A stretch of 64,000 bases of DNA. Source: Squalus acanthias. Taxonomy: Eukaryota. The notes under the pieces are model-generated. The model was given only the letters and a program-made list of their open reading frames with translations. It searched no databases and was not told the origin of the DNA. Shown here piece by piece: positions 4,112 through 60,062 of this stretch; the stretch's first letter is position 1; each line of letters starts with the position of its first letter. The stretch covers positions 62,186,001 through 62,250,000 of the forward strand of contig CM059430.1 in NCBI GenBank assembly GCA_030390025.1, in the 5' to 3' direction. A program made the translations under genes and the position numbers.

Positions 4112-4216
4112 TTATTCTGTACACTTTACCTTCCTTCTAGATTTTCCATTTTTCTCAGAACTAAGCAAAACGACGGTTGCGTACGTCAACGGGTTACCAA
4201 CAGCTTCTTGCAAGGT
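4112..4216 (-). CDS. Gene A terminal cytoplasmic exon with ITIM LTYATV
   Basis: TTTTATAG| TLQEAVGNPLTYATVVLLSSEKNGKSRRKVKCTE*; aligns with gene B terminal exon VTYATLELSGPEKAGKSKNNKMSAEY. Confidence 0.72.
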   Translation of the reverse strand, partial: TLQEAVGNPLTYATVVLLSSEKNGKSRRKVKCTE

Positions 4217-7200
4217 CTATAAAAGCAATGTGTTGTAAAGTTATCTCATTAACTTCATTAATCTTCAGAATGCTTCATAAAACAGGGTAAGATCATGATG
4301 ATATTTAAATATTCCTTAAATTAATATATGTATATTATTGGGCTTGCTACTTACCTCAAGCAATTACATTTACATAACATTCATTCCCCTATAATAAGTT
4401 ATTTTCAAGTAAAGCTATAGAAAATCCCAACTCCATAATGTTGTTAATATAGTTTAATAATCATCAAGACATTGTCCACATTATGCAGTATTTAATGCTC
4501 ATTGCATCCACAGTTTCACAGGCAACATGTTTGATACAGTGTTAGAATCATAGGGAAAGAAATTCATTTTAGCCCAGGATTGGGCGCTAACTTTGGAAAA
4601 GTTTGAGATTTAGCGCGGGGTGCTAAGGAATCTTGCTGCATTAAAAATTCAGTGTCATCGGTCAAAGAAAGGATGGAAGCGCTAAATCAAATGCTAACGG
4701 TCAAGCTCAGTGGCGTTACACTCAAAACTCTAACCAATATCAGGTGCCGTCTAATTACAATTCATCATTGCCACAGGCCATTTCCAGTTCTTAAAGGGGA
4801 GGGTCATTCATGCTGCAGAACCTCATTCTCAGCATTGTTGCCTGTGAACCTGTGTGAGCAAGCATGAGCAGGCCAAGTCCAAGGAGCTGGACGACTCAAT
4901 CAGCTGTACTCATGGCAGATCCACGCCCCAGAGAGAGAGGCCGCAGATTTTCCGACCAAGCATTGGAGGAGTTGTTGTCTGCTGTGGAGAGACAGAGTTT
5001 GGTGCACTACCCAGCAAGTGGCAGGAAGCCCTCGCCACAAGTCTTCCGTGCCATGTGGAGGGTGGTTGCCCATGAGGTGTCAGGCAGCACTGTGGTCCCC
5101 AGCACCCATACACAGTGCCGAAAGAAATTAAAGTACCTCACGCAGGTGGTAAGTGTGAGTCAATGCCTCAACAAATGCTACATACCACTGGCTGCGCCAC
5201 AGTCTGCACACAGTGGCCAAAGCACCACACCCCAGCCCTCACCCATCAACAATCTCTACCTACCAAAACTCTCACCCACATCTCACACCTTACACACAAT
5301 GACAGCTATTCAAATATGGCAGGCACATCACCCAAACATATTGCTCCACAGTCACTCACACATTTTCCTTTCTATTGCAGGCCAAGATGGCTCACAACAG
5401 GAGGGAGCAGGGTCGCACTGGCGGGGGACAAGTCGACACACTGTCTGCGCTAGAAAATAGATTGCTGGAGATTATTGGGTGCTAGGTAGTGGGCGTCATG
5501 GCAACTGGCGACGTTGACCCCTTGGGGACTACAGCGGTATGTTCATCCATACTCCTACTTCTCACATCCCTCTTCCCCCTCACCCCACAAGCCTTTTGCA
5601 CTTTGCAGCTAGTCATGCTGTATGCATTCATTTCGCCCTTCCTGCCCCCTCCCCTCACCGTAACCTGACTCTTGTGTTTTTATGCTTTCAGATGATGAGC
5701 AAGCACCTGAGCAGCCTGTCCCTGAGGACACCATAGAGAGCGGGGCGGGTGATGAGGAAGAGGAAGAACACCCTGTGTCACTGCATGTCTCATCCGCAGG
5801 CACCAGCTCAGATACTGGCACTACGCATTCTTTAGCGGCCAGCATAGTAGCGGGATGTGTACAGGTTGAGGCACCGGGGATGAGCAGGCTGCAGCAAGGC
5901 CAGGGCGAAAGGGTAGCTCGTGGTTCAGCTCCCCAGAAGGCGAATTCTGCTTCACAGGACTCAGATGAGGACCTCGATGGGGAGGCGCTAAGAAGAAGGG
6001 TGTTGGGCATGCACACAGAGATGATAGGTGCAATGGCAAGTGTGCCTGAGAGCCTCTTGGCAATGATAGAGAACGTGAAGGAGTCTGCTTACAAAACTGC
6101 ACAAAGATCTGCACACACCATGGAGCCCATCATTTCTAGTCTGCAAAGGATGATGGACTCCCAGATTGACCGTGGCGACCCAGACCTGATGCCATATGTG
6201 CTGGGTGATCTGGCAGCTTCCACTGCAGCACAGGCAGAAGCGACGCTACGTGTTAGTGCTGTAATGCAGTCTGTGCTTGGTGGCATCCAATGAAAGTGTC
6301 AGCTGTGTCTCAGTGGTTAGCACTATTGCCTCTGAGTCAGAAGGTTATGGGTTCAAGTCCCACTCCAGGAACTTGAGCACAAAAATCTAAGCTGACACAC
6401 CAGTGGAGTACTGAGGGAGTGCTGCACTGTCAGAGGTGTCATCTTTCAGATGAGACATTAAAACGAGTCCCCCCCCCCCTCTGCTCTCTCAGGTGGACGT
6501 GAAAGATCCCATGGCACTATTTCGAAAAAGAGCAGGCCAATTGTCCCTGGTGTCCTGGCCAATATTTATCCCTTAATCATCATATATAAAACAGATTATC
6601 TTTTCAATATCACGTTGCTGTTCGTGGAAACTTGCTGTGCACAAATTGACTGCCGCATTTCTTATATTACAACAGTGACTACACTTCAAAAAGTACTTAA
6701 TTGGCAAAAAAGGGCTTTGAGATATCCAGTGGTCGTGAAAGTCACTGTAGAAATGCAAGTCTTTTTTTCTTTCTCAGACTGCTATCATTCAGTCTCAGCT
6801 TGATGCCACGCAAGCTCAGAATGCTGCCAACGTGGCTGGGTCTACCACCATCGACCGGAGCTTCCACGGTGTCTCAGCAGGCCAGAAATCTGCTCCAAAA
6901 GATTGCTGAGGATGCTGAGGTGTTGCCCAAGAGGAGTGGCAGTAGGTCAGTGGAGCCGGAACCTTCTGTCCTCTCTCAGGATGACAGCATTCCTGCTCCC
7001 ACCACTGCCACTCGCCATTGCCCTTGTCGCTTCCTGTCATCCCACCAGCCGAGACTGCTGCCGCCCGTGCATGCGCTGAAAACCAGCACTTGCGATCTGT
7101 CAAGAATTCTCTTGACAGATCATGCGCCTGCCCGGGAAAAGTGCTTCTGCGGGTGGAGTGTTGCGCTTTGTGCACAACTTCTGCCAACTGAAATACCACA

Positions 7201-10200: not shown

Positions 10201-13200
10201 TAGCGCCATCTGCTGCCGCTAACGGGAGGCGCCAAGGTACTGAATTCCCCCCAAAATCTCTGAAAAACTACATCCGCCTCAACGACGCAGCCTCAACCCA
10301 CTTTGAGTACCCAAAGCCTAGGGCATCAATTTAAATCTCTCATTTACATGATGCATAACCAAAACACAAACAAATTAATTTGGTGCTCGCCCTTTGTGGC
10401 CACTCACTATTGTGCCATTGGCTCCAGCAAATCTTCGTGGCCAACCTTTTAAAATTTCCTTGCAGGGCTCCAAGCTGGGTTTCCAACTGTAGTGGGCAAC
10501 TTGCCCTGGATGGGTGAGCAGAAAATAATTGCTGGTGCAGAACTGTGGCTAATTGAAACATTACACCAATAATCTCAGAAGAAAGGTCATCGATGTTTGA
10601 GAATAAAACACCCAAAGGTGGGAATTTTGTTTAAGGTTAACTTTTCAGATTTTTGCCGTGGTGAAATGACCGGTCCTTGGGCGCATCGGTCAGGAAAATA
10701 GGGACAATGACCAAATACACAGGGCGTGATCCCCATTACTTTGCGCCGGGATCTAGGGACAGCAGCAGCAGCTGCACGACCTATTCACGTAAATTACGTG
10801 GGAGAGGGAGCTCCAGGTCTCCCTCCCATTTTCAAAACGAAGAATTTTCAATATCTAGATGCAGTGATGTCACATGAAGATTGTGTTAGATTTGCGCCGT
10901 GTCTGCCTGCTCTCCTCCGGCTAGATGGCCGGAAAAGGCGTAGCATCAAAACAAACAGAACGCTAAAAGTGAAGTTGTATACTTTTTCCAAGTTGCTAAA
11001 CCATTCTCCGGGCTTGGGAGCCTGCTGCTGTCAGCTGCTTTCAGACTCCTACGGCCCGGGGCCTCACTCAAATTTCCTCCCTTTCTAACCGGGCACTCGA
11101 CCCTGCCACGGAGTCGGCATACACTGGGAGCGTCCCCTGACCATGGTATTGTAACTGACAAAAAAGTACGCTACTCCTGGACCTGAGCAGACTGAGTGCA
11201 CTTAGTGCCTAGACAATGGATTTCGGTACGAATTCTGCGCCAACTTTCACTTGGGAGTACTGCATGTTAACAGTTTTTGATGACCCAGTCTGATGTAAGT
11301 TAACTGAAAAAGTGCACAAACGAGTTATCCTAGTCTGAAATAGATTTGAAATGATCTCAGCTGAACAGAAAATTATCACATTACACTTAAAACATCAATC
11401 AGATAAATGTTTTAAACTTACAGACTTGTCACAATTGATTTCTTCATCTTTTCTCTCCCTGCCTAGTAAAACACAAAATTCAAAGCTTCATTGTGAATGA
11501 TGCACGATATGATTAAGCAAGTATGGCGGATGCCAATTTATAGTGAGACAAAGTCGAAAACATTCATAACATTCCGCAACCTAGATTTTCGCCGTGGGAT
11601 GCTAGTTGACCAATAATGATGCGAAATTGCTTTCTACAAAAAATAAACACTCTGACACTTCTGCCTAAAAAAAGGGAGAAGGATTTCAGATATGTTCATC
11701 CCCCAGTATATTTAAACATGTGGAGATCAGAGAGACGATTTTCGGATCGGAGTGGGGTGGTAGCGCAGCGGGACTACAATCCATCTTCATGTTCATACCA
11801 TTCTAAGATAAGTGCTGCATTTCAGGATCACAGACCGATTAAAAAAATCAACAACCAACCTGAGCTCTATTCCCACGTCAACAAAACTTTTGATCAGTAA
11901 ATTATAGCGTGGAACAATCCTCTCTGCATGCTGACTAGCATTTTCTGTTCGTTGTAATTTGTATTTAAATTGAACAATCTGGTGATAACTTACCTTTACA
12001 ATGACTGAATCTGAACGACATTCCAATGATAATCACCAGCACCAGAAACGTCAATGCAAAGCCTGCGCATCCAAAGATCCGTAAATAAGGCGAGGGCGAA
12101 GTACTGTCACTACCTGCGAGATAAAAATAACATTCACATATGGAGCTGTGTATTGTTGAGGATTCCGTCAGCAATCAGAGCCCTAAATGGAACCTGATAT
12201 TTGAACAATTGTTTACAGCAGTTGAGCATGGGTACTCAAATTGTTAACTGATGGAAGTTGTTGTATCGCTATTTAAAACTGAGCGAAACGGGTGGGAGAC
12301 ATTATCGCCCGGCGGAAAACGGGCTAATAGAACAGAAAATCGCGCGAGGAGTGCAAAACCGGCTGCTGAATTCGTTATCGGCCATTTTGCGCTATCGCTG
12401 AAGACCAATTTTATCCCCTGTTTATTTGATGTTTCTGGAAGGCTGACCGATCTTTAGTTTCTGTATCTGTTTTTCACTCTGCGGGACAAGAGTATTTTCT
12501 ATTGGTATGAATAAAACTTAATTTTTAGTTTTAAGTAGTTAATTAATTCAATTAACAATTGCCCTCGTCACTATGTGGGATTATGTCGTAACTTTTCTTG
12601 CGAAGGTTTCCTCTGTTAGGTATGTCTCGGCATGTTGCATTTCTCTGCAGAATTATGTTTGTGAAATTTCTCCTGCCGCCCCTTTGTTTCATCAACGCTC
12701 CATTCATTCCAAACCAAATGACTGCCATTATTTGAAGAAAAGAATAAATATGCAGCTAGAATTCGGAACCCAACATAACTTTGTTTTTTATGTTTCCCAT
12801 TTCCCTAGCAATATATGTGTCATAGAGCGATCAGCGGAATTCCTCCTCATTTGACACTTCAGAGTAAAGAATTTCAACATTCACGCCACCGACTTGTTAT
12901 TGGACAAAATAAGCTACTTAGCGTTTCGACCATTTGGCGCTGAATCAGCGGTTATTTGATTTGAGATGGGCAGTTTGAACGAAGTGTCAATATTAATGAA
13001 TAAACATGGCCTGATGTGAAAAGAAGAATTTTGGACAGAACTATTTTCCGTGTTACAATATTTACTGAATTGAAGGGGTTCACGTGCATTGGGAGAACTT
13101 TTTAACTTCAGTAGGCGTTTAAAAACAAATGGAAAGGAAAATCTGGCGGTGTGTATAACGGGGCCGATCCTTTTCCGCCAGTTTTACGCCCCACCAAAGT

Positions 13201-16200
13201 TGAAATTTCCGCCCAATTGCAGCCATTCCGGAGGAGGTTGTAGGTCAAAAACTGGAAATCTAAGTGCTCTGGAAATCAACATTAAATTGTAATATTTTTA
13301 ATATTGATGGGATTTTACAAAAATATCATATGGTGGATAATTTCCACTGTTCACTATTTGTAGCTAAATTTCTTACACGTTTCCCTTTCAATAATTAAAA
13401 AAGGAAATCTTCCCCTGTTTGGCAAAGAACCACTGACAGATTAATGGCAGACGTTTGTTTTGTAAGCAAAGTGACATCTTACCTGAGTTAGAATTAGGAA
13501 CCAAGTAAATTGCCATGGCTGGAAACTGGAGGGTCACGTGAGACACCAGACAGACGTAAACAGTCCCTCCCTGGACAGGCTGTGTCTCTTCAAAATAGCT
13601 GGAAGCTTCATACATCCCGGCTCTGCTGAGCTGTTTAATAGTATGTATTCCGGTTTCAATGCGTCGATTATTTTTGTACCAAGTGACAGCCAGTCCCACT
13701 GGGTAAAATGAAGCCATTTCACACACGAGAGCCAAAGAACCGAATACATTACTTTCAGATGGGTTGGAAACAATCCTCAGGGGAGTTGGAGGAGCTGGTG
13801 ACAGGTCGAAGAAGAAAGTTAAATATCTGGTCTATTCTGGAATTTCTGAAGTCGAATAGATAGGACTTCAGATCGGCTACAACCGTATCAGAGAAGTATA
13901 AATCTGTATGTTTATGGTATAGCGAAAGCATTACATTTTACTTATTGTAGATTATAGAATCATAGACAGGTACAGCACAGATGGAGGCTACTCAGCCCAT
14001 CGTGCTTGAGCCGTCTCTTTGGAAGTGCTGTCCAAGTAATCCCACTCCACAGCTCTTTCGTCATAACCCTGCAAATGTTCCCCTTCACGTATTTAACCAA
14101 TTCCCTTTTGAAGGTTGCTATTGAATCTGTTTCGTCCACCCTTTCAGGCAGTCCATTCCAGATCATAACAACTCGCTTCGTATTTTTCCCCTCATGTTGC
14201 TTCTGGTTCTTTTGCCCATTATGCCCAAAATTTATATAGCTCCCTCTATAAAACCTCGAAACCTAACTTTCCAGTGTTATCTCGTTATTGAGAACAATTT
14301 GAACGCGTTGGTGAAGCAGCTCCCTCGTCTCTGTAGCGAATAGAAGATGCGTTTCTGAAGGCCTTCTATGCCTACTATTCCCGACCCAAAGAAACCTTCA
14401 GAATGCACTCACACATTGTCGCTACATACAGTGAGCAGCGGAAGCGCAACCCCACACCCATCGCCCATCTTGTTATGGAGGTAACCCGAGAAATCAACAG
14501 CGGCGGCATAGCATCTTAGACTGATTTTTTCACAATTAGCCCCGTCCACGAAATGAATTATATTTCCAGCCACGAGGATTTTTACTCGTATTACTTGTAT
14601 GGTTTACAATAAACGTACAACATCACAATCAGGGATAATAACTAAAGGCGAACCTTCCACTTCACGGGTTACATCGGCGTGAGAGAAACATTTGTACCCG
14701 GAAAATAAGAACTGTGGCGAATGGACTTTGCACAACTCAGGGACACATTCACGACATTCTTTACCGGTGACATATTCGCTTTTGAAGGGGTTTGAGGAGA
14801 AAAAAATGATTTGGTTCGTCGACCAGAGGCTGAGAGAAGCTATTGACTGAAGAATAGGAAATACAGCCAGGCTTCCGATACTCTGATCTCTCAGTCCCAG
14901 AGAGCACAGTGTCAGCCGTGGCTCAGTGGTAGCACTTTTACCTCCTAGTAAGAAATTCCTGAGTTCTAAGCTCTACTCCAGATACTTCGGGGCATAATCA
15001 AGGCTGACCCTTCAGTGCATTACGGAGGAAGTGCTGCACTGTCGAAGTGATGTTTGGATAAGATATTAAACCTCGGCCCCTCTGCCCTCTCAGGTGAACA
15101 TAAAATATCCCACGGCACTATTCAAACAAGTGCATGGAAATTGTGCCGATGTCCTGGCCAATATTTAACCCTCAAGCACCATCATTAACGATCGAGTCAT
15201 TATCCCATTGTCGGACATTGCTATGTGCACATTGGCTGCCACGTTTTCCTACATTTAAACAGTGACTACATTTCAAAAGCATTTCAACTACATTGTAAAA
15301 CGCTTTGGGACACCAATTGCGCTACATACGTACAAGTTATTTCTTATTTATCGCAGCAGGAGCGGGGACACAATATTTAAAAATAATCACGTGGATTAAC
15401 TTCTGTGTACATGTTATAATTGAAATTAGACTTTATACTCGATAACAACACGGTTAGTGTGATAGTTTAGATGGTCATCTAACTGCAGCTTTAAACAGTT
15501 CAGGATATATTCAAATAAGGCTAATCAAAATGTTATTTATACTGAAAACCTTTCAAGTTATCACAATTTGTACTCGCACCTGTATGGCATGACAACGCTT
15601 CCTGCGCAAGCTTACAAGCATGAAATAACAGAACTAATTATTAATAAAACGATCAAGATGGTTTAAAAAAAGCACACAGATCTACATGTGTTGTATTTTA
15701 TAACTAGAATTTCTATAATTGAAGCATTTGATTTCTAATGTAAATTTTAAAGCAACACGAGGAAGAGTGGGGCATGCCATACTTCATTATTTATTTTGAA
15801 TAACTGTGAGACTATACCGCCGATACGCTCTTTACAATGTTCTTACCACTGACGACAAGCTTTGATCCGCTTCCATTTGCTTTCCTATTTCCCCGATGTG
15901 TCACTCCGCAGTGATAAACTCCAGAGTCCTGGAAACTGATATTCCGGAGCTGGAAGGAGGCTCTTCCTTTCTCAGTAAGAAATCGTTTCCTGGTGTCTGA
16001 GCCTAGTTTTATCAATTCATTTTCGCCAAGTTTCCACCAATAAATATTCACAACTGAATCGCCTTTCAAAACAGGAAATGTGCAATTGAAGACAATGTTT
16101 GTACCAGCGATCGAATTGGCATTTTCAGGGGCTTGGGTTACTTCAAACGGAGTATCGGCAGCAACTATTAAGAAAATGAACATTTATTACAGTTATAAAA

Positions 16201-16329
16201 AACTCGGAGAGAGATTCTGAGAGAGAGAGAGAGAGAGAGAAACATAAAGACAAAGAGCGAACTAAAGAAAATACCTATGAAAATAATCCCCATGAACTGT
16301 ATGCTCCGAAGTACAGCTCTCATAGACAT
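4112..16329 (-). CDS. Gene A: SIRP/NKp30-like VJ-C1 Ig-superfamily type I membrane receptor with one ITIM (multi-exon model, ~316 aa)
   Basis: Phase-compatible GT-AG exons: leader 16329-16275, V 16164-15847, C1 13794-13483, TM 12113-11994, cyto1 11462-11422, terminal 4216-4112 (sum 951 nt). Tail ends ...GNPLTYATVVLLSSEKNGKSRRKVKCTE*. The last intron contains a Harbinger element. Confidence 0.8.
4912..7066 (+). pseudogene. Harbinger Myb/SANT-like DNA-binding protein gene (spliced, interrupted by a SINE)
   Basis: MADPRPRERGRRFSDQALEELLSAVE...WRVVAHEVS...QCRKK; acidic third exon from ~5692 cut by the SINE at ~6296. Confidence 0.75.
6296..6772 (+). mobile_element. tRNA-headed Deu-domain SINE (SacSINE1/AmnSINE1-like), near full length
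   Basis: tRNA-like head CTCAGTGGTTAGCA...GGTTCAAGTCCC; Deu core AGTACTGAGGGAGTGCTGCACTGTC...AAGATCCCATGGCACTATT; tail AAATGCAAGTCTTTT. Confidence 0.85.
7067..8460. mobile_element. Outer MITE (left end truncated) inside Harbinger 1
   Basis: Similar to 1964-3430 (CTTGACAGATC, GCCTGGTAAAA); right end ATTCAGGGCC followed by AAT. Confidence 0.55.
7351..8109. mobile_element. ~760-bp MITE, copy 2 (nested)
   Basis: TIR GGCCCAAAAATTCG / CGAATTTCTAGGCC with ATT target-site duplication on both sides. Confidence 0.85.
8600..9749 (-). pseudogene. Harbinger DDE transposase (HARBI1-like), frameshifted
   Basis: GFPMVQGTIDSTHV, NRKGYHSLNVQLV, FVVVCCMLH motifs spread over several frames. Confidence 0.85.
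11422..11462 (-). CDS. Gene A first cytoplasmic exon
   Basis: TTTTACTAG| GRERKDEEINCDKS |GTAAGT; 41 nt, phase 1-0, matching the equivalent exons of genes B and C. Confidence 0.75.
11994..12113 (-). CDS. Gene A transmembrane exon
   Basis: GSDSTSPSPYLRIFGCAGFALTFLVLVIIIGMSFRFSHCK; CAG| acceptor, AAAG|GTAAG donor; 120 nt. Confidence 0.88.
13091..13214. mobile_element. Short MITE-like element
   Basis: GGGAGAACTTTTTAACTT ... AAGTTGAAATTTCCGCCC, flanked by ATT and AAT. Confidence 0.45.
13483..13794 (-). CDS. Gene A Ig C1-set exon
   Basis: APPTPLRIVS...LVCEMASFYPVGLAVTWYKN...VYVCLVSHVTL (C1 motifs CxxxxFYP, W, YxCxVxH); phase 1-1, 312 nt. Confidence 0.92.
13955..14220 (-). mobile_element. CR1 LINE 3' fragment
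   Basis: IWNGLPERV...FKREL, typical CR1 RT C-terminus. Confidence 0.7.
14909..15345 (+). mobile_element. Deu-domain SINE, older copy (gene A V-C1 intron)
   Basis: Same head and core as 6296-6772. Confidence 0.8.
15847..16164 (-). CDS. Gene A Ig V-set exon (germline-joined VJ type)
   Basis: EVTQAP...FNC...YWWK...DSGVYHC...ANGSGSKLVVS; acceptor TTAATAG|, donor G|GTAAG; phase 1-1, 318 nt. Confidence 0.92.
16219..16240 (+). repeat. (GA)n microsatellite in gene A intron 1
   Basis: Direct reading. Confidence 0.85.
16275..16329 (-). CDS. Gene A leader (signal peptide) exon
   Basis: MSMRAVLRSIQFMGIIFI then a phase-1 donor G|GTATTT; short intron with a (TC)n tract before the V exon. Confidence 0.7.
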
Positions 16330-19385: not shown

Positions 19386-19389
19386 TTGC

Positions 19390-27900: not shown

Positions 27901-27904
27901 TCAC

Positions 27905-29968: not shown

Positions 29969-30142
29969 CTATTTCGTTCTTGCATCTGTGTAGACGGCCT
30001 CTGTTACTCTTCTTGGAGTTTTCGTCTGTATCTCGGCATATTCTGCGCTCATTTTATTATTTTTAGATTTTCCCGCTTTCTCGGGGCCAGACAATTCTAG
30101 AGTCGCGTACGTCACCTTGTCCCGGGCTGTCCCTTGTTTTAT
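29969..30142 (-). CDS. Gene B terminal exon (ITIM VTYATL and AEYAEI)
   Basis: TTTTCAG| IKQGTARDKVTYATLELSGPEKAGKSKNNKMSAEYAEIQTKTPRRVTEAVYTDARTK*. Confidence 0.85.
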   Translation of the reverse strand: MKQGTARDKVTYATLELSGPEKAGKSKNNKMSAEYAEIQTKTPRRVTEAVYTDARTK

Positions 30143-33100
30143 CTGAAAAGCCAATGTTTGGAAATATTGTTGATTGATCGTTTTACCAGTTTCTGGTTTG
30201 CTGCTCAAGGCAGCCGGCAGAATAACACACAAAACGTTTTAGATACAACACACGGTGAAAGTCAGAACAGCCCCAAATACTCCGCTATTAGATTTATTTT
30301 AGTCCTCCACATGTGATCTGCGTTTCTCTTATCTGCTTCTCAGCCCCACCTGAGCATACGCTGAGCTCTCCTCTTCACGTTTAAATCTTGGAGTTTTCCT
30401 GGCTTTGCTCAAGTCTACTGCAGCATAAGCCACGATCTCGTCATTGGCTCCCTGCATGGGCCAGAAAGAAAATGTATTGTTATGTGGCTAGTTCATTGCC
30501 CTCACAAATTTACAAACTGCTGACCAAACAATAAACAGAATGACCTGGGCTACAAATAAAATGCAGAAACCACAGCTAATATATTTAAAGATGTGCGAAT
30601 ATTAAGGCCGGTAAATAGTGTGCCCATTGTAACTTACATTTCAACCTGTCGATTTTCAGTACAATACAGTGATACAGATATGTTTAAACAAGAGGTAGTT
30701 TCAGCATCATATCAGATTCCAGAAGCAACGTTTAGATGGATGTACACATAACGAATACCTAGTTATATGTTGAATGAAGCTACGGATTTCATTTTTCTCT
30801 TTCGTTAATCACTTACATCTGCATCGCAACAAGTGTGAAAACACGATTTGAATGACCCATCAAAGAGGGACAAATACTTTTGTGAAATAGATTTTGATGA
30901 AATATCCCCATCATAAGAATATTTATTTACACTGGAACACTATTCCTGGATAAATTATATGAACCTACCAGCTCTTCATGAGGGTCTAGTATTGTTATAC
31001 TTTCCTGTTTACCTGCAAATTAATGGAATTTAATTACATTCAATGATGAAAATGTTTATTCAGTTTCCATGTTTGCACTTTCAAAAGTATTTTGCAGTCA
31101 ATGAACCGCTTAACATGACTTTAGATATATAGGTTGACAGAGCAATGGCAGCTCTAATTCAACGCAGTGAAGAGTAGAGCGCTACAGCTAGGAAGAAAAA
31201 ATAAACTACACATGTACTTCATGGATTGTATTCAAATAGCTAAAGATGGAACTGAAAGAGACCTAGGGGTTTAGTAGACTGGACGCTAAACTTGACCATC
31301 CAATGCATAGCAGCAATGGACAAAGCCAATAGGCTGATGAACGACATAGGCAAAGCAGTAGAATGAAAGTCAGAGGAGGGCACGATCAAACTGTATAGTG
31401 CTCTTGTCACACGGACCATTGAATAATGTGACCAATTTAGGTCACTAATGGTCAAGCGCTAGTGCCAGTGCAGAGATGAGCCACCAGGCTGGTTTCCCAG
31501 GGTCAGGGGACTGAGCTATGAGGACACTCTGAATAAACGTGATCTTTTAGACTGGAAAGGAGGCGTCTCAGCTATGATCTTATGGAAACATATAAGATAG
31601 CTAAGCGTATAGAAAATGTTAATCCTCAGTTTTATTTCATTGATTCTCAGGACGTTGGTGTCGCTGACAAGGGCAGCATTTATTGTCCATCTTTAGTTGC
31701 CCTTAATTACAGACAACCGAACGGTATACAAGATCACTTCAGAGGGCAGTTAAGTGTTAACCATATTGGTATGTAACTGATGTGACATATAGGCCAGATC
31801 GGGTAAAAATGGCAAGTTTCCGTTTCTAAAGGACATTAATGAATTCCTTAGCATTTTATGACAACCCGACAGCCTCATAGTCACTTGTCTTTTACTGATA
31901 CCAGCTTTTTATTTCCACAATTTTTAAACTGCATCTAAACTCTCACAATGCCTTGGATGGGTTTACCCACCTTCTCGGGATTACAAAACCAGACCTTTGG
32001 ATTACCAGTTCAGTAACATAAGCACTACACTACCGTACCCGTTTAGTATCAGATATTTAACTGCGAGGCCTGAACTCGGGGACACTGGTAAAAAAACTAG
32101 CAAATGAGAATTGTAGGCATGATGCCAGGAAATTCTTCTTTACAGAGTGATCAACATGAGGAACAAAGTTCCACATACAGAAAATGAGGCAAACGACCTG
32201 AGATCCCTTAGCAAACATCTGGATTCTACACTGGGGAAACAGTCCATCTGTCGTGATGGACCAAATGACCTTCCTCATCAGCAGTTATTTTCTGATATTA
32301 CATTTTCCGGGCTGTTTTGAAAATCCGAATCAATGTAGCCATCTACAGTCGTGTACACCGACTCGCAACTGGACACTGACCCCACTTTACCCAAACTCGT
32401 CACAGGCCCCCAAACTGATGAAACAATCGATCAAATTGCACTTATCATCTGCCACAAAGTGGAAATTTTCGTTGTTAAAATCCAGATGATCAGATCCTTT
32501 AGAGTCTCATTCTGTGATAATTCTTTCATTATAAGATGCTGAATTCAGCGCAATTTGCAACATGCGATTTCTGTTCCTGTAGCATCAGATATCATAACCT
32601 GAACCTTTAAGTAATAATCGCGCTGCTCTCCTGCAGTGCCGGCCATGACGCGCTCTCTATCCCTCTAAAGATTTGTATTCAATCAAACGATTAACGCAAT
32701 ACTTACCTTTATTCTTCAAACTGCATCTCGCCCCAATGATGATCATGAGCACCAGAAGCGCCAATCCACCCAGCGCACATCCAAGACCCCAGATATAACG
32801 ATATTTACCATCAGATTCTGGAAGAGTAAAAGGATACATACTGATTTCTAATTTGTGGCTGTCGTTACCTGAAAAGATACATCGGGATAATTTGTTGGCT
32901 AAACTGCTGCTCATATTTACAGCAACTACGCAGTATAGCAAGAGAAGATGTTCATTTTGAAAATAACCTTACTTTAGCTTTTTAGATTTGATATCAAAAG
33001 AAACTTCTCACAAAAGAGTGATACACGGCCGGAATAATCTGCGAGGGAGGCAATTAGTTTAGGGTGCTCTGAGTGTTAGTATTTAGGAGAGTTAGAATTC

Positions 33101-35800
33101 CAGATGAATAATTTTCGATGGACAGAAAGGCTTGTTCTTGTACTTGACTTTTATTTTGCTCTCAAACGATTGTTTGATGAAATCGCGGCAATTCAGTGAC
33201 ACGTGACTCGCTATTGCCGAAGGAAAAGGCGGATTGTATCAATTGGGTTTAAATGCAAATTCAATTCTCTGCAGTGTATTTACTGAAGTAAAATTGTCAC
33301 TGAATAAGAAAGGAAACTCGCACAAGGTTATTTGTTAATTACAGAAAAATAGGTGTTAATAAACCGACATCTTGCAACCAATTGCAGTGCAAACACATCT
33401 GGGTCACAGTCTGAATGAAATGTATGAAACGGGTTCCCGCTCCAAACCTCTTTATCACGGAGCGGTTGTGTTACGGCCAGTCCACATGCTAATTCCTGAC
33501 CAATTCTGAGTGAATTGCCCAACAGCGGCCGGAATCATGAGCCGCACTGGGAGACATGGGAGACCAGAAAAAAGAACTGCCGCTTCTAGTCCTGAAACTC
33601 ATGGAAGGAAAGCAGATAATGGGAAAGAATAAAATCAATCTAACAAGAGTACAAATTTGAATGTTTAATAATAAGCAAGAGATGTAAAATAATTGGATGG
33701 AAGAGCTACACCACCTGCTCATTTTTTTTTACAATTTGGAAGCTACGGAGTTTTAAAACGCAGTTTCTGGATGGAGGGCGATAATAAGACTCTCGGTTTT
33801 ACAACAGGTTCGGGTCAATAATTTTTTACATTGAAACATTGATTTTCTCTTTGCTTTGATATTTGCTGGGAGCTTTTTTCTATCTTCATGGTTATCAATA
33901 TAAAAAACTCTATGAAATAGCCTTTCAGAATATAACAGTAGTTGACCTCAGTTCTTGGCCTTTTGGCCTCGTACCTGGGTCGGAATTAGCAACTGTGTGG
34001 ATGGCAATGACGGGAGTACCGAGGGAGACATGAGATACCAAACAAATGTAAACAGCCCCATTCGGCACAGGCTGCGTCTCTTCCAAAGAGCTGGAAACTT
34101 CATACAGTCCCACAGTGTTCAGCCGTTTAGTGGAATTTATCCCAGTTGCGGTTTCGACGCCATTTTTATACCAAACGAGGGTTAATTCGCCCGGGTAAAA
34201 CTCCGCCGTTTCACACACAAGAGTCAGAGACGCAGCTGAATTGCTCTCGGGTGTCCTGGAGACAATCTTCACTGGAGTTGGGGCAGCTGCGGAACAGACC
34301 ATGGGGAAAATCAGGTTACTGGGGAGATAGTAAACATAAGATAAGTTTGTTAGTAACCCTAGGTCTGTCTGTCTGTCTCCCCAAGAGAGAAATTAATAAT
34401 CTGTCCATTACCGATAATAAAGCAGGGCCGAAGAGGATATCGGACAGCTCACACAGCCGAAGCATGAGAACGGCTGAGCGAAATTACTTTCCCTTCAACC
34501 TCAAAAGGCTGCAACAACAGTCTCTGGGCAATGTTTTATTTATTGGAGGCGAAAGAGCTGCAAAATTGCTGTTCGTGGTCCACTTTGTTGAGTGAATCCA
34601 TTGATCAGCAGTTAAATTAAACTGATCTGAAGTCCGCCACGCGAATCAGCCTGTCAGTATGTGAGCATTAATTTCATAAGAGAGACTGTTAAACCTCATT
34701 TACAGCGATAGGGACAAACAGAATATCTAAAATGGAGCAAGTAACGTGTATATGACGGGAGTGGGGCATTAACAGAAAAGATTTTCAGTCAGTTATCAAT
34801 ATATTTGGAATTTGGTCCCCAACTTCCATCATCAGAATTCCGATGTAAACATACATATTGAGATGAATCGAGTAACATGTTACTTGCGACAGGTCATCGA
34901 CCTGAAGCGTTGACTCTGCTCCTTTCTCCACAGCTGCTGCCTGAACTGCTGAGTATTTCCAACATTTTCTGTTTATATTTCAGATTTCCAACATCCGCAG
35001 CATTTTGACTGAGTAACATGTTAATTATTCTGGTTATTTTGATGGCATTTTACACAACTAAGCAAATGATATTGTGCCGTATAATTAGCAGTTGTGTGCA
35101 GAGTTTCAGTGTAAATGTCTTAATATAATTGTTTTATAATATCAAAGACGGTGCAATTAAACAATGACAAAACATCAATCTCGCTACATTTGATACAATT
35201 GGACGTTCCCGCTCACTCCGGTCACTTACCGCACACAGTTAGATGTGATCCTGTTCCATTTCCAATAATTCTTCCCTGACGGATCACTGCGCAGTGATAG
35301 ATTCCAGAGTCCTGGAAAGTCACGTTCAGTAACTCAAAGAAACCGCCTCCTTTTTTTTTCAGAACAAATCGTTTTCTGTTATCGGCTCCTGTTTGCAGAT
35401 ATTCATTCTCATCATGTTTCCACCAGCGCACTTCTACCCCTGAATTGTCATGAGAAAGGGGGATTACGCAATGGAAGGTTATGTCTGTCCCCCTTAATTT
35501 AATTACTTGTTCGGGAGTTTGAGACACGCTGATCGAAGTATGCGCAGCAGCTGTTGAAAATATATTCAAAGTTTGGTTAATTGTATTCTATGCGGAATAA
35601 AACACTTTAAAATGCATTTCTACAAGGAAATGAAAATGAGAAAGAAGAATACAGACGGACTAACTGTACCCATTCATTTTGTGTGGTATCTGCTTCAGAT
35701 TTTTTACCGCGACGGTTGGGATAGAGAATAAACAGTTACCTGTGTAAATGATCCCCGGGAGAAACAGGAAAAGGGAAGGAAACATCACAGTCGACAACAT
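29969..35800 (-). CDS. Gene B: SIRPalpha-like inhibitory VJ-C1 Ig-superfamily receptor (7 exons, 374 aa)
   Basis: Exons 35800-35740, 35550-35230, 34286-33975, 32817-32707, 31012-30969, 30451-30350, 30142-29969; all GT-AG and phase-compatible, sum 1125 nt with no internal stop. Tail motifs VAYAAV, SAYAQI, VTYATL, AEYAEI (plus AVYTDA). Confidence 0.9.
30350..30451 (-). CDS. Gene B second cytoplasmic exon (ITIM VAYAAV and start of SAYAQ/I)
   Basis: CAG| GANDEIVAYAAVDLSKARKTPRFKREEESSAYAQ |GTGGG; 102 nt. Confidence 0.82.
30969..31012 (-). CDS. Gene B first cytoplasmic exon
   Basis: TTTGCAG| GKQESITILDPHEEL |GTAGG; 44 nt, phase 1-0, needed to link the TM exon to the phase-0 ITIM exon. Confidence 0.75.
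32707..32817 (-). CDS. Gene B transmembrane exon (uncharged TM core)
   Basis: ESDGKYRYIWGLGCALGGLALLVLMIIIGARCSLKNK; CAG| and |GTAAGT; 111 nt. Confidence 0.9.
33975..34286 (-). CDS. Gene B Ig C1-set exon
   Basis: AAPTPVKIVS...LVCETAEFYPGELTLVWYKNG...VYICLVSHVSL; 312 nt, same length as the gene A C1 exon. Confidence 0.92.
34883..35010. mobile_element. Short dispersed repeat (Penelope-type) with 13-bp target duplication; hairpin-arranged relative at ~48870-49060
   Basis: GAGTAACATGTTA at 34870-34882 and 35011-35023; core GGTCATCGACCTGAA...GCTGCCTG...GCTGAG. Confidence 0.55.
35230..35550 (-). CDS. Gene B Ig V-set exon (VJ type)
   Basis: SVSQTP...TFHC...RWWK...DSGIYHCAV...IGNGTGSHLTVC; 321 nt, phase 1-1. 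Confidence 0.92.
35740..35800 (-). CDS. Gene B leader exon
   Basis: MLSTVMFPSLFLFLPGIIYT then phase-1 donor G|GTAACT. Confidence 0.8.
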
Positions 35801-38775: not shown

Positions 38776-38949
38776 GGTTTGCACAAGGGTCTTTAATTAT
38801 ATTGTTGTTTTATATATGTGGTTATTGACTTTGGATACATTTATTATTGAAATCTCACAGAGATGCTGCTGTGTCACATTTCAGCTTTGGGGTGTGGTAT
38901 GGAATGAGATATTTATGGAATGATAGGGATTGGATGAGCAGCTGGGAAG

Positions 38950-50395: not shown

Positions 50396-50573
50396 TCCCG
50401 AATGATGGTGTCTTGCCTCTGCCCACTGTCCTGATGTGGTTGAAGCCGGACGGCTTGATGCCGCATTACAAATGCTTTGTAAAATCTACTCCTTGTTCGC
50501 CTCCAACTTTTAGTTCTGAGATGTAAAACACTGTGACAGGAACGTCTTGAATTAGTAACATTCCTCACAAAAT

Positions 50574-58432: not shown

Positions 58433-58837
58433 TATGATATAGTACTGAAATTAGTTACTCTGTTTTCATTTGTTATTTTTGGGTTTCCTCGATTTTTTGG
58501 AGCCTGACAATCCTAGCGTCACGTAAGTCACTTGTTTGTTCGGTAAATCCGTGTATGGAAGGAATGTTTATGGGTCGGTTTGCCAGTTTCTTTTCTGCTG
58601 CTCATCAGAATAACACACAAAAAACCTGAGCTACAATACACGACTAGAGTCAGCCAACCATATATTCTCCATTATCGCATGAATGTTGGTGCTACTGTGG
58701 TGATCTGTGTCTGTCTCATCCACTTCTCAGCCCCGCCTGAGGGTACGCGGCACTCTCCTGTTCAAGTTTAAGACTTGAAGTTGACATAATGCTGCTCAAA
58801 TCTATTGCAGCATATTAGCGATTTGAGCCTTTGCTTC
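58433..58837 (-). pseudogene. Decayed ITIM exons of gene C
   Basis: 58837-58737 is a 101-nt copy of the 102-nt gene B exon, with a 1-nt deletion before the first Tyr and donor GT>GC. The terminal exon remnant keeps VTYVTL (58531-58514) but lacks its AG acceptor and the later Tyr motifs. Confidence 0.8.
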
Positions 58838-59233
58838 CTATATGGACCAGAAACAAAATATGTTGTTATGTGTCTGTTTCATTGCTTTCACCAGTTCACG
58901 TGCTGCTGCTGAAACATTGAACAGAACGACCTGGGCTGGAGATAAAGCACAAAAACCATAATGAATATCTTAAAATAAGTACGAATATAAAGGCCGATGA
59001 TTACTGCAATCACTGTAACTAATATTTAATCATGTCGATGTTCTCTCTGCAACACAGTTACAGACATCTTTAATGTGCAGCAGTTCTAGAATACGAATGC
59101 ATTAAGATTTTTACCCCCCCAAAAAACAAAGATCATTGATTCTATAAACAATTATTACCGAGGTACAGTTTCAACGAAACTGACAGTTTTCTCTTGTGCT
59201 CTTTAAACATTTATAACAGCACCCATCGGGAGC

Positions 59234-59337
59234 GGGGGAGAAATTGGTCTTCGGCGGGAGCGAAATGGGCGAAAGCGAATCAGCAACCCGTTGCACACCG
59301 CGCCCGATTTTGTTTTCGGAAGACCAATTTCATCCCC
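59234..59337. mobile_element. ~100-bp MITE-like element (related copy ~12290-12418)
   Basis: TIR GGGGAGAAATTGGTCTTC ... GAAGACCAATTTCATCCCC; nearly the same right end at ~12400-12418. Confidence 0.55.
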
Positions 59338-59461
59338 GAGCTCCCGGTGTTAAATATTTTTCTAAACACGATTTGAATGAGCCATTACGCGGGACAAATA
59401 CTGTTAGAAAATAGACAAACTGTTCTGACATGATTATGATATAATCTCTCCATTACAGCAA

Positions 59462-59550
59462 TCATTCTTCGTATTTCAACCCTTTGCGGAGATGCATGAA
59501 TGAACATTTCGGATCTTCACTGCGTAGCGGTCCCTTTACACCTTTTTCAC
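59462..59550 (-). CDS. Gene C first cytoplasmic exon, donor lost, predicted read-through short tail
   Basis: Intact acceptor TTCACAG|. At the position of the gene B donor (GTAGGTTCA) the sequence is AAATGTTCA. Read-through gives GEKGVKGPLRSEDPKCSFMHLRKGLKYEE*. Confidence 0.6.
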
Positions 59551-59948
59551 CTGTGAATTAATGACGTTTACACATAATGAATGATAGAAGTATTTACTCA
59601 GTTTCAATATCAGCGTTTTCAAAGACATTTCTAGAGAAGGTGCAAAGCCGAACAGGATTCTCAATTTCAGATTTTGCAGACAGTGTTTGAAATCGTAGCC
59701 CCTGTAGCGAGCAGCAATGGTCTTCAGCCATTTCGGGCCGGAGGCTCACCGCTTCACTCGAACTAATTGAGGACTCCCAACGGACTGGTTTGGAAAGTGA
59801 TTGTGTGTCTGAGCAAATTTCTTTTACCACTTGCTGCAAAGTGGAAATTTCAGTTGCATATATACAAATAATCAGATCCATTTTTAATTTGATTGTTGGA
59901 GTATTTCTGCGTGTTGTGCTAAAATCAAAGGCTTACAGCAGATCTTAC

Positions 59949-60062
59949 CTTTATTAATCTGAAATTGGCAGTGCGTCCCAATGATGATCAGGAGAACTAG
60001 AAACGCCAATCCACCCACCGCATATCTAAAATACGAGTAGTACGGGGACATACCGACATTAT
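59949..60062 (-). CDS. Gene C transmembrane exon with Arg (5' exons presumably beyond the window end)
   Basis: TTGCAG| DNVGMSPYYSYFRYAVGGLAFLVLLIIIGTHCQFQINK |GTAAG; open 114-nt exon homologous to the gene B TM exon; flanking intron 60240-60630 resembles 33020-33440. Confidence 0.85.

What the first reader, a model, noticed from the sequence alone, without database searches (positions are those of the whole stretch)
4112..60062. Candidate paired inhibitory/activating VJ-C1 receptor family (SIRP-like) in a probable cartilaginous fish
Seen: three tandem paralogues in the same orientation with matching exon phases but graded signalling ends. B has an uncharged TM and four Tyr motifs, A has one ITIM, and C has a TM Arg with decayed ITIM exons. 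Established: mammalian paired-receptor families (SIRPalpha/SIRPbeta, KIR, LILR) combine ITIM-bearing members with short-tailed, charged-TM members that signal through ITAM adaptors. Inference: this is a shark-lineage paired receptor complex built on an antigen-receptor-like V-C1 ectodomain. I cannot tell from the sequence alone whether it has been described.
Basis: partly seen in the sequence, partly recalled or inferred. Interest (0 to 1): 0.88.

Follow-up and report, generated by a model that had tools for sequence, protein, structure and literature searches.

The report
Shark V-C1 inhibitory/short-tailed receptor gene cluster
Three neighbouring shark genes belong to a cartilaginous-fish family of cell-surface receptors with an antibody-like outer part; some members carry inhibitory tails and others have lost them, much like the paired on/off immune receptors of mammals.

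Summary
Three same-strand (minus) paralogues lie at 4112-60062. Their V, C1 and TM exons are all phase 1-1. Gene B is intact: leader, germline-joined VJ exon, C1-set exon, TM, and three tail exons with four YxxI/L/V motifs. Gene C shows only a TM exon plus B-like tail exons that are broken. Its Arg sits in the TM column where R/K recurs in short-tailed relatives. Gene A has a boundary Arg and one possible ITIM exon 7 kb downstream; its closest relative found (P0165, Heterodontus; orthology inferred) is short-tailed.

Every named V-C1 homologue found is from sharks, rays, skates or chimaera. Automatic annotation names them variously SIRP-alpha-like, tapasin-related, Ig-lambda-like and others. 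A family profile scores SIRP-alpha about as high as Ig light chains, and there is one C1 domain, not two. So it works like SIRP but is not shown to be SIRP.

The paired inhibitory/non-inhibitory reading is supported at family level in raw counts, but not after correcting for relatedness. Activation through an adaptor is inference only. Gene C's V and C1 exons lie outside the window. Other first-stage notes of this scan report the same gene type elsewhere in this genome. Six literature searches found no description.

The parts
16275..16329 (-). Gene A leader exon (ATG at 16329; phase 0 to 1)
   Evidence: The peptide MSMRAVLRSIQFMGIIFI parallels the N-terminus of P0165.
15847..16164 (-). Gene A VJ exon (V-set; ends ..NGSGSKLVVS; phase 1-1)
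   Evidence: Pfam V-set/I-set. Borders. 71% identical to the P0165 V domain.
13483..13794 (-). Gene A C1-set exon (312 nt; phase 1-1)
   Evidence: Pfam C1-set, E 6.5e-10. 82% identical to P0165; the pair is starred at 97 in the C1 tree.
11994..12113 (-). Gene A TM exon (..SPYLRIFGCAGFALTFLVLVIIIGMSF..; Arg at the outer boundary; phase 1-1)
   Evidence: 72.5% identical to P0165 over 40 aa.
11422..11462 (-). Gene A first cytoplasmic exon (RERKDEEINCDKS; phase 1 to 0; GTAAGT donor)
   Evidence: Matches the C-terminal end of P0165.
4112..4216 (-). Candidate last exon of gene A with one ITIM (..NPLTYATVVLLSSEKNGKSRRKVKCTE, then stop). Its use is unproven.
   Evidence: It has a good acceptor and a compatible phase 0. 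It lies 7.2 kb downstream, beyond a transposon remnant. The closest relative, P0165, lacks such a tail.
35740..35800 (-). Gene B leader exon
   Evidence: One run contig joins 35740 to 35550 (X1 record 8).
35230..35550 (-). Gene B VJ exon (V-set; ..IGNGTGSHLTVC; phase 1-1)
   Evidence: Pfam V-set, E 1.1e-10. 80% identical to P0002. One contig ends exactly at 35230 (X3 record 24).
33975..34286 (-). Gene B C1-set exon (312 nt; phase 1-1)
   Evidence: Pfam C1-set, E 5.2e-12. Contigs lie on 33975-34285 and 33975-34222 (X2 record 9 and X3 record 17).
32707..32817 (-). Gene B TM exon (SDGKYRYIWGLGCALGGLALLVLMIIIGARCSLKNK). The Arg lies outside the hydrophobic core. An alternative in-frame acceptor lies about 54 nt upstream.
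   Evidence: 79.5% identical to P0180, which has Tyr at the Arg position.
30969..31012 (-). Gene B cytoplasmic exon 1 (KQESITILDPHEEL; phase 1 to 0)
   Evidence: Matches P0180.
30350..30451 (-). Gene B cytoplasmic exon 2 (VAYAAV ITIM; SAYAQ completes to SAYAQI across the junction)
29969..30142 (-). Gene B last exon (VTYATL ITIM; AEYAEI, ITSM-like; stop)
   Evidence: 68% identical to the P0180 tail.
59949..60062 (-). Gene C TM exon (NVGMSPYYSYFRYAVGGLAFLVLLIIIGTHCQFQINK). The Arg lies 16 residues before the end of the hydrophobic run. Phase 1-1, intact AG/GT.
   Evidence: 77.6% nt identity to gene B's TM exon. Resembles the TM of P0011.
59465..59550 (-). Gene C first cytoplasmic exon. The acceptor is kept but there is no usable donor, so it reads through to a stop (..KGLKYEE). 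The predicted tail is about 30 aa without ITIM or ITAM.
   Evidence: The acceptor region is homologous to B's cy1.
58737..58838 (-). Gene C decayed homologue of cytoplasmic exon 2 (1-nt frameshift leading to a stop; GC where B has the GT donor)
58466..58545 (-). Gene C decayed homologue of the last exon (AG acceptor lost; frameshift; VTYVTL still readable)

Best explanation
The window holds part of a tandem cluster of a multigene family that, as far as these searches reach, is confined to cartilaginous fish. Each gene encodes a type I membrane protein with these parts:
- a leader;
- one germline-joined VJ domain that does not rearrange;
- one C1-set domain, so the ectodomain looks like a single Ig light chain or TCR chain;
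- a TM segment;
- a modular cytoplasmic tail.

Gene B is an intact inhibitory member. After ligand binding, its ITIM and ITSM-like tyrosines would be phosphorylated and recruit the SH2 phosphatases SHP-1/SHP-2. This signalling step is inferred from the motifs.

Gene C is a diverged duplicate of a B-like gene. Its ITIM exons have been inactivated, and a small deletion has brought an Arg into the outer part of the TM helix. That is the same alignment column where R/K recurs in short-tailed relatives of other species. Gene C is therefore most likely a non-inhibitory partner, possibly coupled to an adaptor and activating. This would parallel SIRP-beta, activating KIR and LILRA, which arose from inhibitory ancestors.

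Gene A belongs to a separate lineage (the LRIFGC type) whose closest relative found in another shark is short-tailed. In this genome it may or may not splice to a lone ITIM exon 7 kb downstream.

Shown: the gene structures, domain types, decay of C's tail exons, family distribution and tail/TM types. Inferred: phosphatase recruitment, adaptor pairing, ligand, and cell type.
For: - Exon models with canonical borders and uniform phase 1-1. Pfam V-set and C1-set. C1 hallmarks read, using the criteria in PMC2785349 (passages seen).
- Run contigs reproduce the leader/V joint 35740|35550, the V 3' border at 35230, and both C1 borders.
- Gene C's 3' region is colinear with gene B's: 639 nt at 69% across introns and exons, and the TM exon at 77.6%. 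Yet the ITIM exons carry a frameshift and stop, a lost AG acceptor, and a GT-to-GC donor change.
- Family breadth: 46 of 46 hits are chondrichthyan, as are 44 of 45, 8 of 10 look-ups and 10 of 10. All 18 V-C1 proteins among the 20 look-ups are chondrichthyan.
- In the TM alignment (72 proteins), 13 have R/K in gene C's column and 3 in gene A's column. Among the 71 distinct ones, 14 of 16 basic-TM members have no ITIM/ITSM match (median tail 22 aa). By contrast, 37 of 55 uncharged members have one (median tail 96 aa). Fisher p = 1.3e-4.
- On the ectodomain tree, the basic-TM state changes 9 times and often sits next to ITIM-tailed sisters, for example P0038/P0175 (98*) and P0032/P0159 (100*). 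P0011 falls inside the B-like clade.
Against: - Gene C's leader, V and C1 exons are not in the window. Only an unchecked scan note places them 1.7 kb beyond the end.
- No RNA run was listed as holding gene C's TM and tail stretch. The only runs available are three small contig sets whose RNA status is a guess. They lie on gene B's exons at 91-97% likeness, so they may come from paralogues or alleles, and none covers a TM or tail exon.
- The TM-charge/ITIM association is not significant when relatedness is respected (independent pairs, median p 0.625).
- 18 of 55 uncharged members also lack a motif; some of these are probably truncated gene models. Two basic-TM members match the motif pattern (P0089, P0101). 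P0015, which the TM score threshold dropped, has an Arg in that column together with an ITIM tail.
- An Arg near the TM start occurs in all three window genes, including inhibitory gene B.
- No adaptor with an acidic TM was looked for or found. No ITAM-like ORF is in the window.
Confidence: 0.62

Rival explanations
1. Gene C is simply a dying copy (a pseudogene). The part of the cluster in the window is functionally inhibitory only, and the Arg in C's TM is incidental.
For: - C's tail exons are broken.
- No RNA holder was listed.
- C's V and C1 exons are not visible.
- A 5.6 kb or longer stretch rich in LINE fragments separates the TM exon from the window end.
- An Arg also occurs near the TM in genes A and B.
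Against: - The TM exon keeps its reading frame and both splice sites, and is 77.6% identical in nucleotides to B's. The tail exons around it took disabling changes.
- The Arg falls in the column that carries R/K in 13 of 72 relatives, nearly all of them short-tailed.
- A catshark gene model (P0011) has a similar FRY.VGGLAF TM with a 5-aa tail.
Confidence: 0.25
2. The genes are true orthologues or co-orthologues of tetrapod SIRP genes (SIRP-alpha/beta/gamma), simplified to one C1 domain.
For: - NCBI's automatic names are often 'tyrosine-protein phosphatase non-receptor type substrate 1-like' or 'signal-regulatory protein beta-1-like'.
- SIRP-alpha (2wng) aligns in one stretch across V and C1 with 66.5 bits, and its d3 adds 49.0 bits.
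- Gene B's tail has two ITIM + xEYAxI pairs. From memory, this resembles SIRP-alpha's four-tyrosine tail.
Against: - There is one C1 exon, not two. Of 187 stored proteins, 90 are V-C1; the single V-C1-C1 (P0069) is a perfect internal repeat.
- Ig lambda (71.1 bits) and Ig kappa (68.5 bits) score as high as SIRP-alpha. Other family members are auto-named tapasin-related, Ig-lambda-like, NCR3LG1-like, CD276 or MHC II beta-like.
- Single-exon searches against solved structures put no SIRP in the best 60 for either V or C1.
- No bony-vertebrate V-C1 relative came up.
- ITIM + ITSM tandems occur in many unrelated inhibitory receptors, for example PD-1 and BTLA (PMC12151841, passages seen).
Confidence: 0.12
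3. The family is an offshoot, or a non-rearranging relic, of the antigen-receptor lineage (Ig light-chain or UrIg relatives) that gained TM and ITIM exons. The resemblance to paired innate receptors came later.
For: - The best single-unit profile hits are Ig lambda J-C and Ig kappa V-C. UrIg2 ranks second overall.
- Foldseek's top matches for the modelled ectodomain are Fab light chains and TCR beta.
- Unchecked first-stage notes place similar genes inside Ig light-chain clusters on other pieces of this genome.
- Sharks keep other non-rearranging VJ genes, UrIg and UrIg2 (PMC12227049, abstract and passages seen).
Against: - The V exon alone is only weakly similar to Ig/TCR V domains (E about 1e-3 to 1e-2).
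- No RSS and no Ig gene segments are in this window (exact consensus only).
- UrIg has V-C1-C2-C3 and is described as an antibody, not as an ITIM receptor.
- This rival concerns origin and does not contradict the functional reading.
Confidence: 0.2

Closest known systems
SIRP family (SIRP-alpha / SIRP-beta / SIRP-gamma) of tetrapods
   Same: - An N-terminal V domain with a J-like strand is followed directly by a C1-set domain.
- One member has a four-tyrosine ITIM-type tail (gene B).
- Relatives have short tails and a basic TM residue, or no signalling motif.
- Profile similarity to SIRP-alpha d1-d2 is 66.5 bits.
   Different: - One C1 domain instead of two.
- No higher score than Ig light chains.
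- No orthologue chain through bony fish was found.
- The basic residue is an Arg at the outer end of the TM. From memory, SIRP-beta has a mid-membrane Lys.
- The ligand is unknown.
NITR (novel immune-type receptors) of bony fish
   Same: A large, clustered, fast-evolving family of non-rearranging VJ receptors, with ITIM-bearing members and members with a charged TM. This description of NITRs is recalled; NITR is listed among joined-VJ genes in PMC11599192 (passage seen).
   Different: From memory, the second NITR domain, where present, is I-type and not C1. Here Pfam gives C1-set above its cut-off, together with the FYP and CxVxH hallmarks. NITRs are reported only from bony fish (recalled).
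UrIg / UrIg2 of elasmobranchs (PMC12227049)
   Same: Non-rearranging single-exon VJ followed by C1-set domain(s), and retained in cartilaginous fish. UrIg2 ranks second in the profile search of solved structures.
   Different: UrIg2 is V-C1-C2-C3 and forms disulfide-linked dimers with an Fc-like part. The paper describes it as an antibody-like molecule, and 'SIRP' and 'ITIM' occur nowhere in its text. The genes here have one C1, a TM and ITIM tails, and form a large multigene family.
Paired receptor families in general (KIR, LILR/PIR, CEACAM1/3)
   Same: Tandem clusters, repeated switches between an ITIM-tailed form and a short-tailed form with a charged TM, and ITIM remnants left in the 3' region of the short-tailed gene (gene C).
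   Different: The ectodomain is V + C1, like an antigen-receptor chain, rather than C2/I-set domains. Pairing with an adaptor has not been shown.

Membership tests
SIRP family | Ectodomain of one V-set plus two C1-set domains | tested here: not met
   Genes A and B each have one C1 exon between V and TM. Of 187 stored proteins, 90 are V-C1. The only V-C1-C1 (P0069) is an exact internal duplicate.
SIRP family | Closer in sequence to SIRPs than to other V-C1 proteins | tested here: inconclusive
   Family profile against solved structures: Ig lambda 71.1 bits, Ig kappa 68.5, SIRP-alpha d1-d2 66.5 (d3 49.0), UrIg2 V-C1 52.5. No tree with SIRPs could be built, because no SIRP sequence was obtainable as a stored protein.
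SIRP family | Conserved synteny with the SIRP locus, or orthologues in bony vertebrates | not testable with these tools
No bony-vertebrate V-C1 relative appeared, but word-based candidate limits apply.
SIRP family | SIRP-alpha-type tail with four tyrosine motifs that bind SHP-1/2 | tested here: met
   Gene B has VAYAAV, SAYAQ|I, VTYATL and AEYAEI. Only the presence of the motifs was tested; binding was not.
SIRP family | Binds CD47 | not testable with these tools
   No ligand data are available.
Paired inhibitory/activating Ig-like receptors (functional class) | Closely related ectodomains joined either to ITIM tails or to short tails with a charged TM | tested here: met
   Met at family level, with sister pairs P0038/P0175 and P0032/P0159, and P0011 inside the B-like clade. 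The 2x2 table gives Fisher p 1.3e-4. The independent-pairs test is not significant. For the B/C pair in the window, C's ectodomain cannot be seen.
Paired inhibitory/activating Ig-like receptors (functional class) | The short-tailed member associates with an ITAM adaptor through the TM charge | not testable with these tools
   No adaptor gene or ITAM-like ORF is in the window. This needs biochemistry.
C1-set Ig domain | (F/Y)(F/Y/H)P at the BC loop, 13 residues from Cys(B) to Trp(C), and xVxH after Cys(F) (criteria from PMC2785349, passages seen) | tested here: met
   Gene B: C-ETAEFYPGELTLV-W and CLVSH. Gene A: C-EMASFYPVGLAVT-W and CLVSH. Pfam C1-set scores 46.4 and 39.7 bits against a cut-off of 21.
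Germline-joined (non-rearranging) VJ domain | J-like GxG(T/S)xLxV in the same exon as V, followed by a splice donor, with no RSS | tested here: met
   GTGSHLTV (gene B) and GSGSKLVV (gene A) each end the V exon just before GT. There are 0 matches to the consensus heptamer-spacer-nonamer pattern (exact pattern only).
NITR | V domain alone or with an I-type second domain; bony-fish family (recalled) | tested here: not met
   The second domain is C1-set. All named homologues are chondrichthyan.
UrIg / UrIg2 | V-C1-C2-C3 architecture | tested here: not met
   A single C1 exon is followed by the TM exon. The UrIg2 architecture is taken from the PDB entry title and from PMC12227049.

The most novel reading that the evidence does not exclude
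This family is the long-sought counterpart in cartilaginous fish of the NK/myeloid paired receptors. It is built not on C2/I-set domains but on a non-rearranging, antigen-receptor-like VJ-C1 chain that may dimerise through its C1 domain as Ig and TCR chains do. If it is truly interleaved with Ig light-chain clusters, as unchecked scan notes say, it would be a living relative of the pre-RAG receptor from which Ig and TCR arose. It would have both inhibitory (ITIM) members and adaptor-coupled (TM-Arg) members.
Probability: 0.15. Interest if true: 0.85.

Novelty: new variant of a known kind. Interest (0 to 1): 0.62.

Why it matters
C1-set domains are otherwise tied to antigen receptors, MHC, tapasin, beta-2-microglobulin and SIRPs (PMC2785349, passages seen). 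I know of no reported germline-encoded NK-like or myeloid paired receptors in cartilaginous fish (recalled), and none turned up in my searches.

This is a large, clustered family of VJ-C1 receptors across the cartilaginous fish. It has ITIM tails and recurrent short-tailed TM-Arg forms. That makes two open questions testable:
- what kind of innate recognition system the oldest jawed vertebrates use;
- how a V-C1 chain looked and signalled without rearrangement.

The gene models already sit in public annotations under misleading mixed names. The value lies in recognising them as one family and in its paired-type architecture, not in new sequence.

Tried and rejected
- Single-exon searches against solved structures gave generic Ig hits (DCC, VNAR, TCR beta and CD79b for V; IgA, MHC II beta and UrIg2 for C1). 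No SIRP was in the best 60, so the SIRP label could not be confirmed that way.
- I considered whether the V-C1-C1 protein P0069 showed a SIRP-like three-domain form. I rejected this because its two C1 copies are identical repeats.
- I considered CD79b because of recurrent V hits. I rejected it because CD79b has no C1 domain and carries an ITAM (recalled).
- I looked for decayed ITIM exons in gene A's long intron and for further exons anywhere in the window, using the tails of 19 homologues. None was found beyond those listed.
- I looked for the 'MGxxFS' small genes noted by the scan and for ITAM-like ORFs in the window. None was found.
- Rfam found nothing.
- An RNA test of gene C was not possible. 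No RNA holder was listed, and the single read-laying run went to gene B.
- A tree with SIRP, NKp30, NITR, tapasin and TCR/IgL domains could not be built.
- Literature searches (search listings), plus passages of PMC4451681, PMC11599192, PMC12227049, PMC4701786 and PMC4016189, gave no description of this family. The searches for 'PRARP' and for the Dornburg and Yoder review did not find those papers. PMC10530332 is not held. Supplementary files were not opened and may hold gene lists that bear on novelty.

Full report
**What is in the window.** The window has no N and is 39-53% G+C. Six-frame ORFs and tblastn with the exon peptides show Ig-like exons only on the minus strand. There are two V-type exons (16164-15847 and 35550-35230), two C1-type exons (13794-13483 and 34286-33975), three TM exons (12113-11994, 32817-32707 and 60062-59949), and tail exons. 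I read the sequence around each and checked borders and phases by script. No joined model was translated, searched, folded or put in a tree.

**Gene B (35800-29969)** is complete, with seven exons:
- a leader, phase 0 to 1;
- a VJ exon of 321 nt;
- a C1 exon of 312 nt;
- a TM exon of 111 nt; these three are all phase 1-1;
- three cytoplasmic exons, phases 1 to 0, 0 to 0, and 0 to stop.

Every border is AG/GT. The V exon runs through a J-like GTGSHLTV motif and ends at a GT donor, so V and J are joined in the germline. No consensus RSS is present in the window (exact pattern only). Pfam scores the exons as V-set (42.1 bits, cut-off 26) and C1-set (46.4 bits, cut-off 21). The C1 exon has the hallmarks listed by Hatherley et al. 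(PMC2785349, passages seen): FYP, exactly 13 residues between the B-strand Cys and the C-strand Trp, and CLVSH. The tail carries VAYAAV, SAYAQ|I (across a junction), VTYATL and AEYAEI. Three fit the ITIM pattern (S/I/V/L)xYxx(I/V/L). The fourth resembles the xEYAxI 'ITSM' consensus discussed in PMC12151841 (passages seen).

**Gene A (16329-4112)** has the same leader, V, C1, TM and cy1 layout and the same phases. After cy1 (11462-11422, GTAAGT donor), the only further family exon is at 4216-4112 (LTYATV, then stop). That is 7.2 kb downstream, beyond a Harbinger-type transposon remnant (DDE_Tnp_4). The exon is phase-compatible and has a good acceptor, but nothing shows it is used. Its closest relative found (orthology inferred from the starred pairs in both domain trees) is Heterodontus francisci P0165. 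That protein is 82% identical in C1, 71% in V and 72.5% in TM. It ends right after cy1 with a short tail.

**Gene C** is represented only by its 3' half. The TM exon (60062-59949) is intact. The next exon keeps its acceptor (59550) but has no usable donor, so it would read through to a stop after about 30 residues with no ITIM or ITAM. Downstream, blastn shows that C is colinear with B across introns and exons: 59073-58469 against 30687-30053, at 69% over 639 nt. The TM exon is 77.6% identical. The homologue of cy2 has a 1-nt frameshift leading to a stop and a GC instead of the GT donor. The homologue of the last exon has lost its AG acceptor and is frameshifted, although VTYVTL can still be read. 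This is the classic footprint of a short-tailed receptor derived from an inhibitory one. C's leader, V and C1 are not in the window. A first-stage note (s1-889981, unchecked) reports a leader + VJ + C1 gene 1.7 kb past the window end, which would fit.

**Transcript evidence.** No RNA run was listed as holding gene C's stretch. Three small contig sets with the same species label were offered, and their RNA status is a guess. I laid them on gene B, with these results:
- one contig joins 35550 to 35740, skipping 189 nt with GT..AG on the minus strand; this is exactly my leader/V junction;
- one 415-nt contig lies on 33975-34285, exactly the C1 exon, and runs on unlike at both ends;
- another contig starts at 33975;
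- one contig ends at 35230, the V exon's 3' end.

These contigs are 91-97% alike. They show that a close paralogue or allele is transcribed with the same exon borders; they do not show that gene B itself is. No contig covered the TM or tail exons. The very deep bins at 31542-32138 and 34726-35123 are intronic repeats.

**The family.**
- An exhaustive HMMER search with the two V exons found 570 proteins at E <= 0.001.
- All 18 V-C1 proteins whose source I looked up are chondrichthyan (8 of the 10 look-ups and 10 of 10). The two others are turtle multi-V proteins.
- All 46 hits and 44 of 45 are chondrichthyan. The 45th is a mollusc Ig protein at 49 bits, far below the 222 bits or more of the rest.
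- Species named: Heterodontus, Heptranchias, Mustelus, two Scyliorhinus, Cetorhinus, Chiloscyllium, Stegostoma, Pristis, Hemitrygon, Hypanus, two Mobula, Amblyraja and the chimaera Callorhinchus.
- In several species the members share one chromosome-size record. Eighteen of the 46 listed models lie on a single 99.65-Mb Heterodontus record.
- Automatic names are inconsistent: SIRP-alpha-like (PTPNS1-like), SIRP-beta-1-like, tapasin-related-like, Ig lambda-1-like, NCR3LG1-like, CD276 homologue and MHC II beta-like.
- The best identity to the window is 71-82% (Heterodontus), so the window's own species is not among the annotated hits.

**Is it SIRP?** A 38-member family profile against all solved structures ranks an entry that begins with an Ig lambda chain first, UrIg2 second and SIRP-alpha fourth. 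Per V-C1 unit the scores are Ig lambda J-C 71.1 bits, Ig kappa V-C 68.5, SIRP-alpha d1-d2 66.5 (d3 a further 49.0), UrIg2 V-C1 52.5 and VH-CH1 51.0. An AlphaFold model of homologue P0158 has about 90 or more pLDDT over most of the two Ig domains. Its best Foldseek matches are Fab light chains and TCR beta. So the ectodomain is an antigen-receptor-like V-C1 unit, about equally distant from IgL and SIRP. The one-C1 architecture fails a defining SIRP feature. I therefore describe it as working like SIRP or NITR-type receptors, not as a SIRP family member.

**Paired character.** In the family alignment the ITIM-tailed members usually have an uncharged ..LIAGCAGGGL.. TM. An Arg or Lys recurs in one column in P0011, P0013, P0017, P0023, P0032, P0038, P0089, P0101, P0125, P0135, P0168, P0179 and P0191. 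Gene C's Arg falls in that column. Gene A's Arg, like those of P0165 and P0160 (Lys in P0028), lies three columns earlier. Gene B's Arg lies six columns earlier, outside the core, and is Tyr in the Heterodontus relative P0180.

Among 71 distinct TM-bearing proteins:
- 16 have R/K in one of the two columns. Of these, 14 have no ITIM/ITSM match (median tail 22 aa). The two matches are a C-terminal VGYDAL and a juxtamembrane VRYVQL.
- 55 are uncharged there. Of these, 37 have a motif (median tail 96 aa).
- Fisher p = 1.3e-4.

Against this reading:
- Relatives share labels. The independent-pairs test on the ectodomain tree is not significant (8-9 pairs, median p 0.625).
- Two proteins dropped by my TM threshold have an Arg in that column. 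One of them, P0015, has an ITIM tail.
- Some 'no motif' models are probably truncated.

In favour, the TM state changes at least 9 times on the tree, and several basic-TM members are starred sisters of ITIM members. This is the pattern expected of repeated inhibitory-to-short-tail conversion. A distinct short-tailed subgroup has an R...(D/E)H TM (for example P0013, P0017, P0101 and P0168).

**Mechanism.** Shown: the domain structure, motifs, decay of C's tail and the family pattern. Inferred:
- Gene B signals through SHP phosphatases, whose SH2 pockets are reported conserved from sharks onward (PMC12151841, passages seen).
- C-type members are non-inhibitory and may pair with an adaptor that has an acidic TM. 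An Arg in the outer third of the TM is typical of FcR-gamma/CD3-zeta-coupled receptors (recalled, not tested).
- Because C1 domains are always found paired with another domain (PMC2785349, passages seen), the receptors may act as dimers. Gene B and many relatives have an unpaired Cys at the V/C1 junction (..LTVC).

**Novelty.** Six library searches and passages of the most relevant papers gave no description of this family. The UrIg2 paper (PMC12227049), the closest work on non-rearranging shark VJ genes, contains neither 'SIRP' nor 'ITIM'. The library lacks most subscription journals, and supplements were closed, so this is not proof of absence. The gene models themselves are public. Other first-stage notes of this scan (unchecked) report the same gene type on other pieces of this genome, inside Ig light-chain clusters. 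I could not test that.

**Verdict.** It is SIRP-like in logic but not shown to be SIRP. Activation is unproven and gene C is only half visible.

Noticed in passing
window 4600-10200 and 36700-40150: Two remnants of the same Harbinger/PIF-type DNA transposon. Each has a plus-strand ORF pair with similar N-terminal sequence (4864-6293; 36740-38356) and minus-strand DDE_Tnp_4 fragments (9120-9575; 38855-39316). One sits inside gene A's last intron, the other between genes B and C.
   Followed up: partly
window 19617-20159, 53400-56400, 61165-63100: LINE fragments: a reverse transcriptase (RVT_1), a GDSL-esterase-like ORF (55753-56091), and an AP-endonuclease piece (62357-62698). The strong negative GC skew at 42-44 kb and 52-56 kb coincides with such elements.
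   Followed up: partly
window 31542-32138 and 34726-35123: Intronic repeats of gene B attract very deep contig pile-ups (up to about 43,000 summed word depth) in the three runs. They are abundant, probably transcribed interspersed repeats.
   Followed up: no
window 35231-35236 (end of gene B's V exon) and homologues P0002, P0180, P0025, P0018, P0024: An unpaired Cys sits at the V/C1 junction (..LTVC). It is conserved in a subset of the family and could form an interchain disulfide. Gene A has Ser there.
   Followed up: no
stored proteins P0013, P0017, P0089, P0101, P0108, P0135, P0168 (other sharks): A short-tailed subgroup has a distinctive TM: an Arg near the outer end (Gln in P0108) and (D/E)H at the inner end (for example RFILAFLVILILTTIIVEH). 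Both basic and acidic residues in one TM hint at a specific partner chain.
   Followed up: partly
stored proteins P0001, P0003, P0007, P0016 (P0001 and P0007 confirmed as turtle): The nearest V-domain relatives confirmed outside cartilaginous fish are turtle proteins with three to six tandem VJ-like domains (..GxGTxVTI). Some have ITIM tails. They are auto-named NCAM2, FcRL5 or titin-like.
   Followed up: no
stored proteins P0069 (Amblyraja) and P0078 (S. canicula): These gene models contain exact internal repeats: the C1 domain in P0069, and the TM plus tail in P0078. They are probably assembly or annotation artefacts, or very recent exon duplications.
   Followed up: partly
window 501-901 and 1880-2286: Two near-identical ORF pairs about 1.4 kb apart (MFTSLGGRRLMWSINARLNG..) mark a direct repeat of unknown kind at the window's start.
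   Followed up: no
window 32817-32871: Gene B's TM exon has a second in-frame acceptor (ttttcag|GT) about 54 nt upstream of the one used in my model. It would add 18 residues to the stalk. There are no reads to decide between the two.
   Followed up: no
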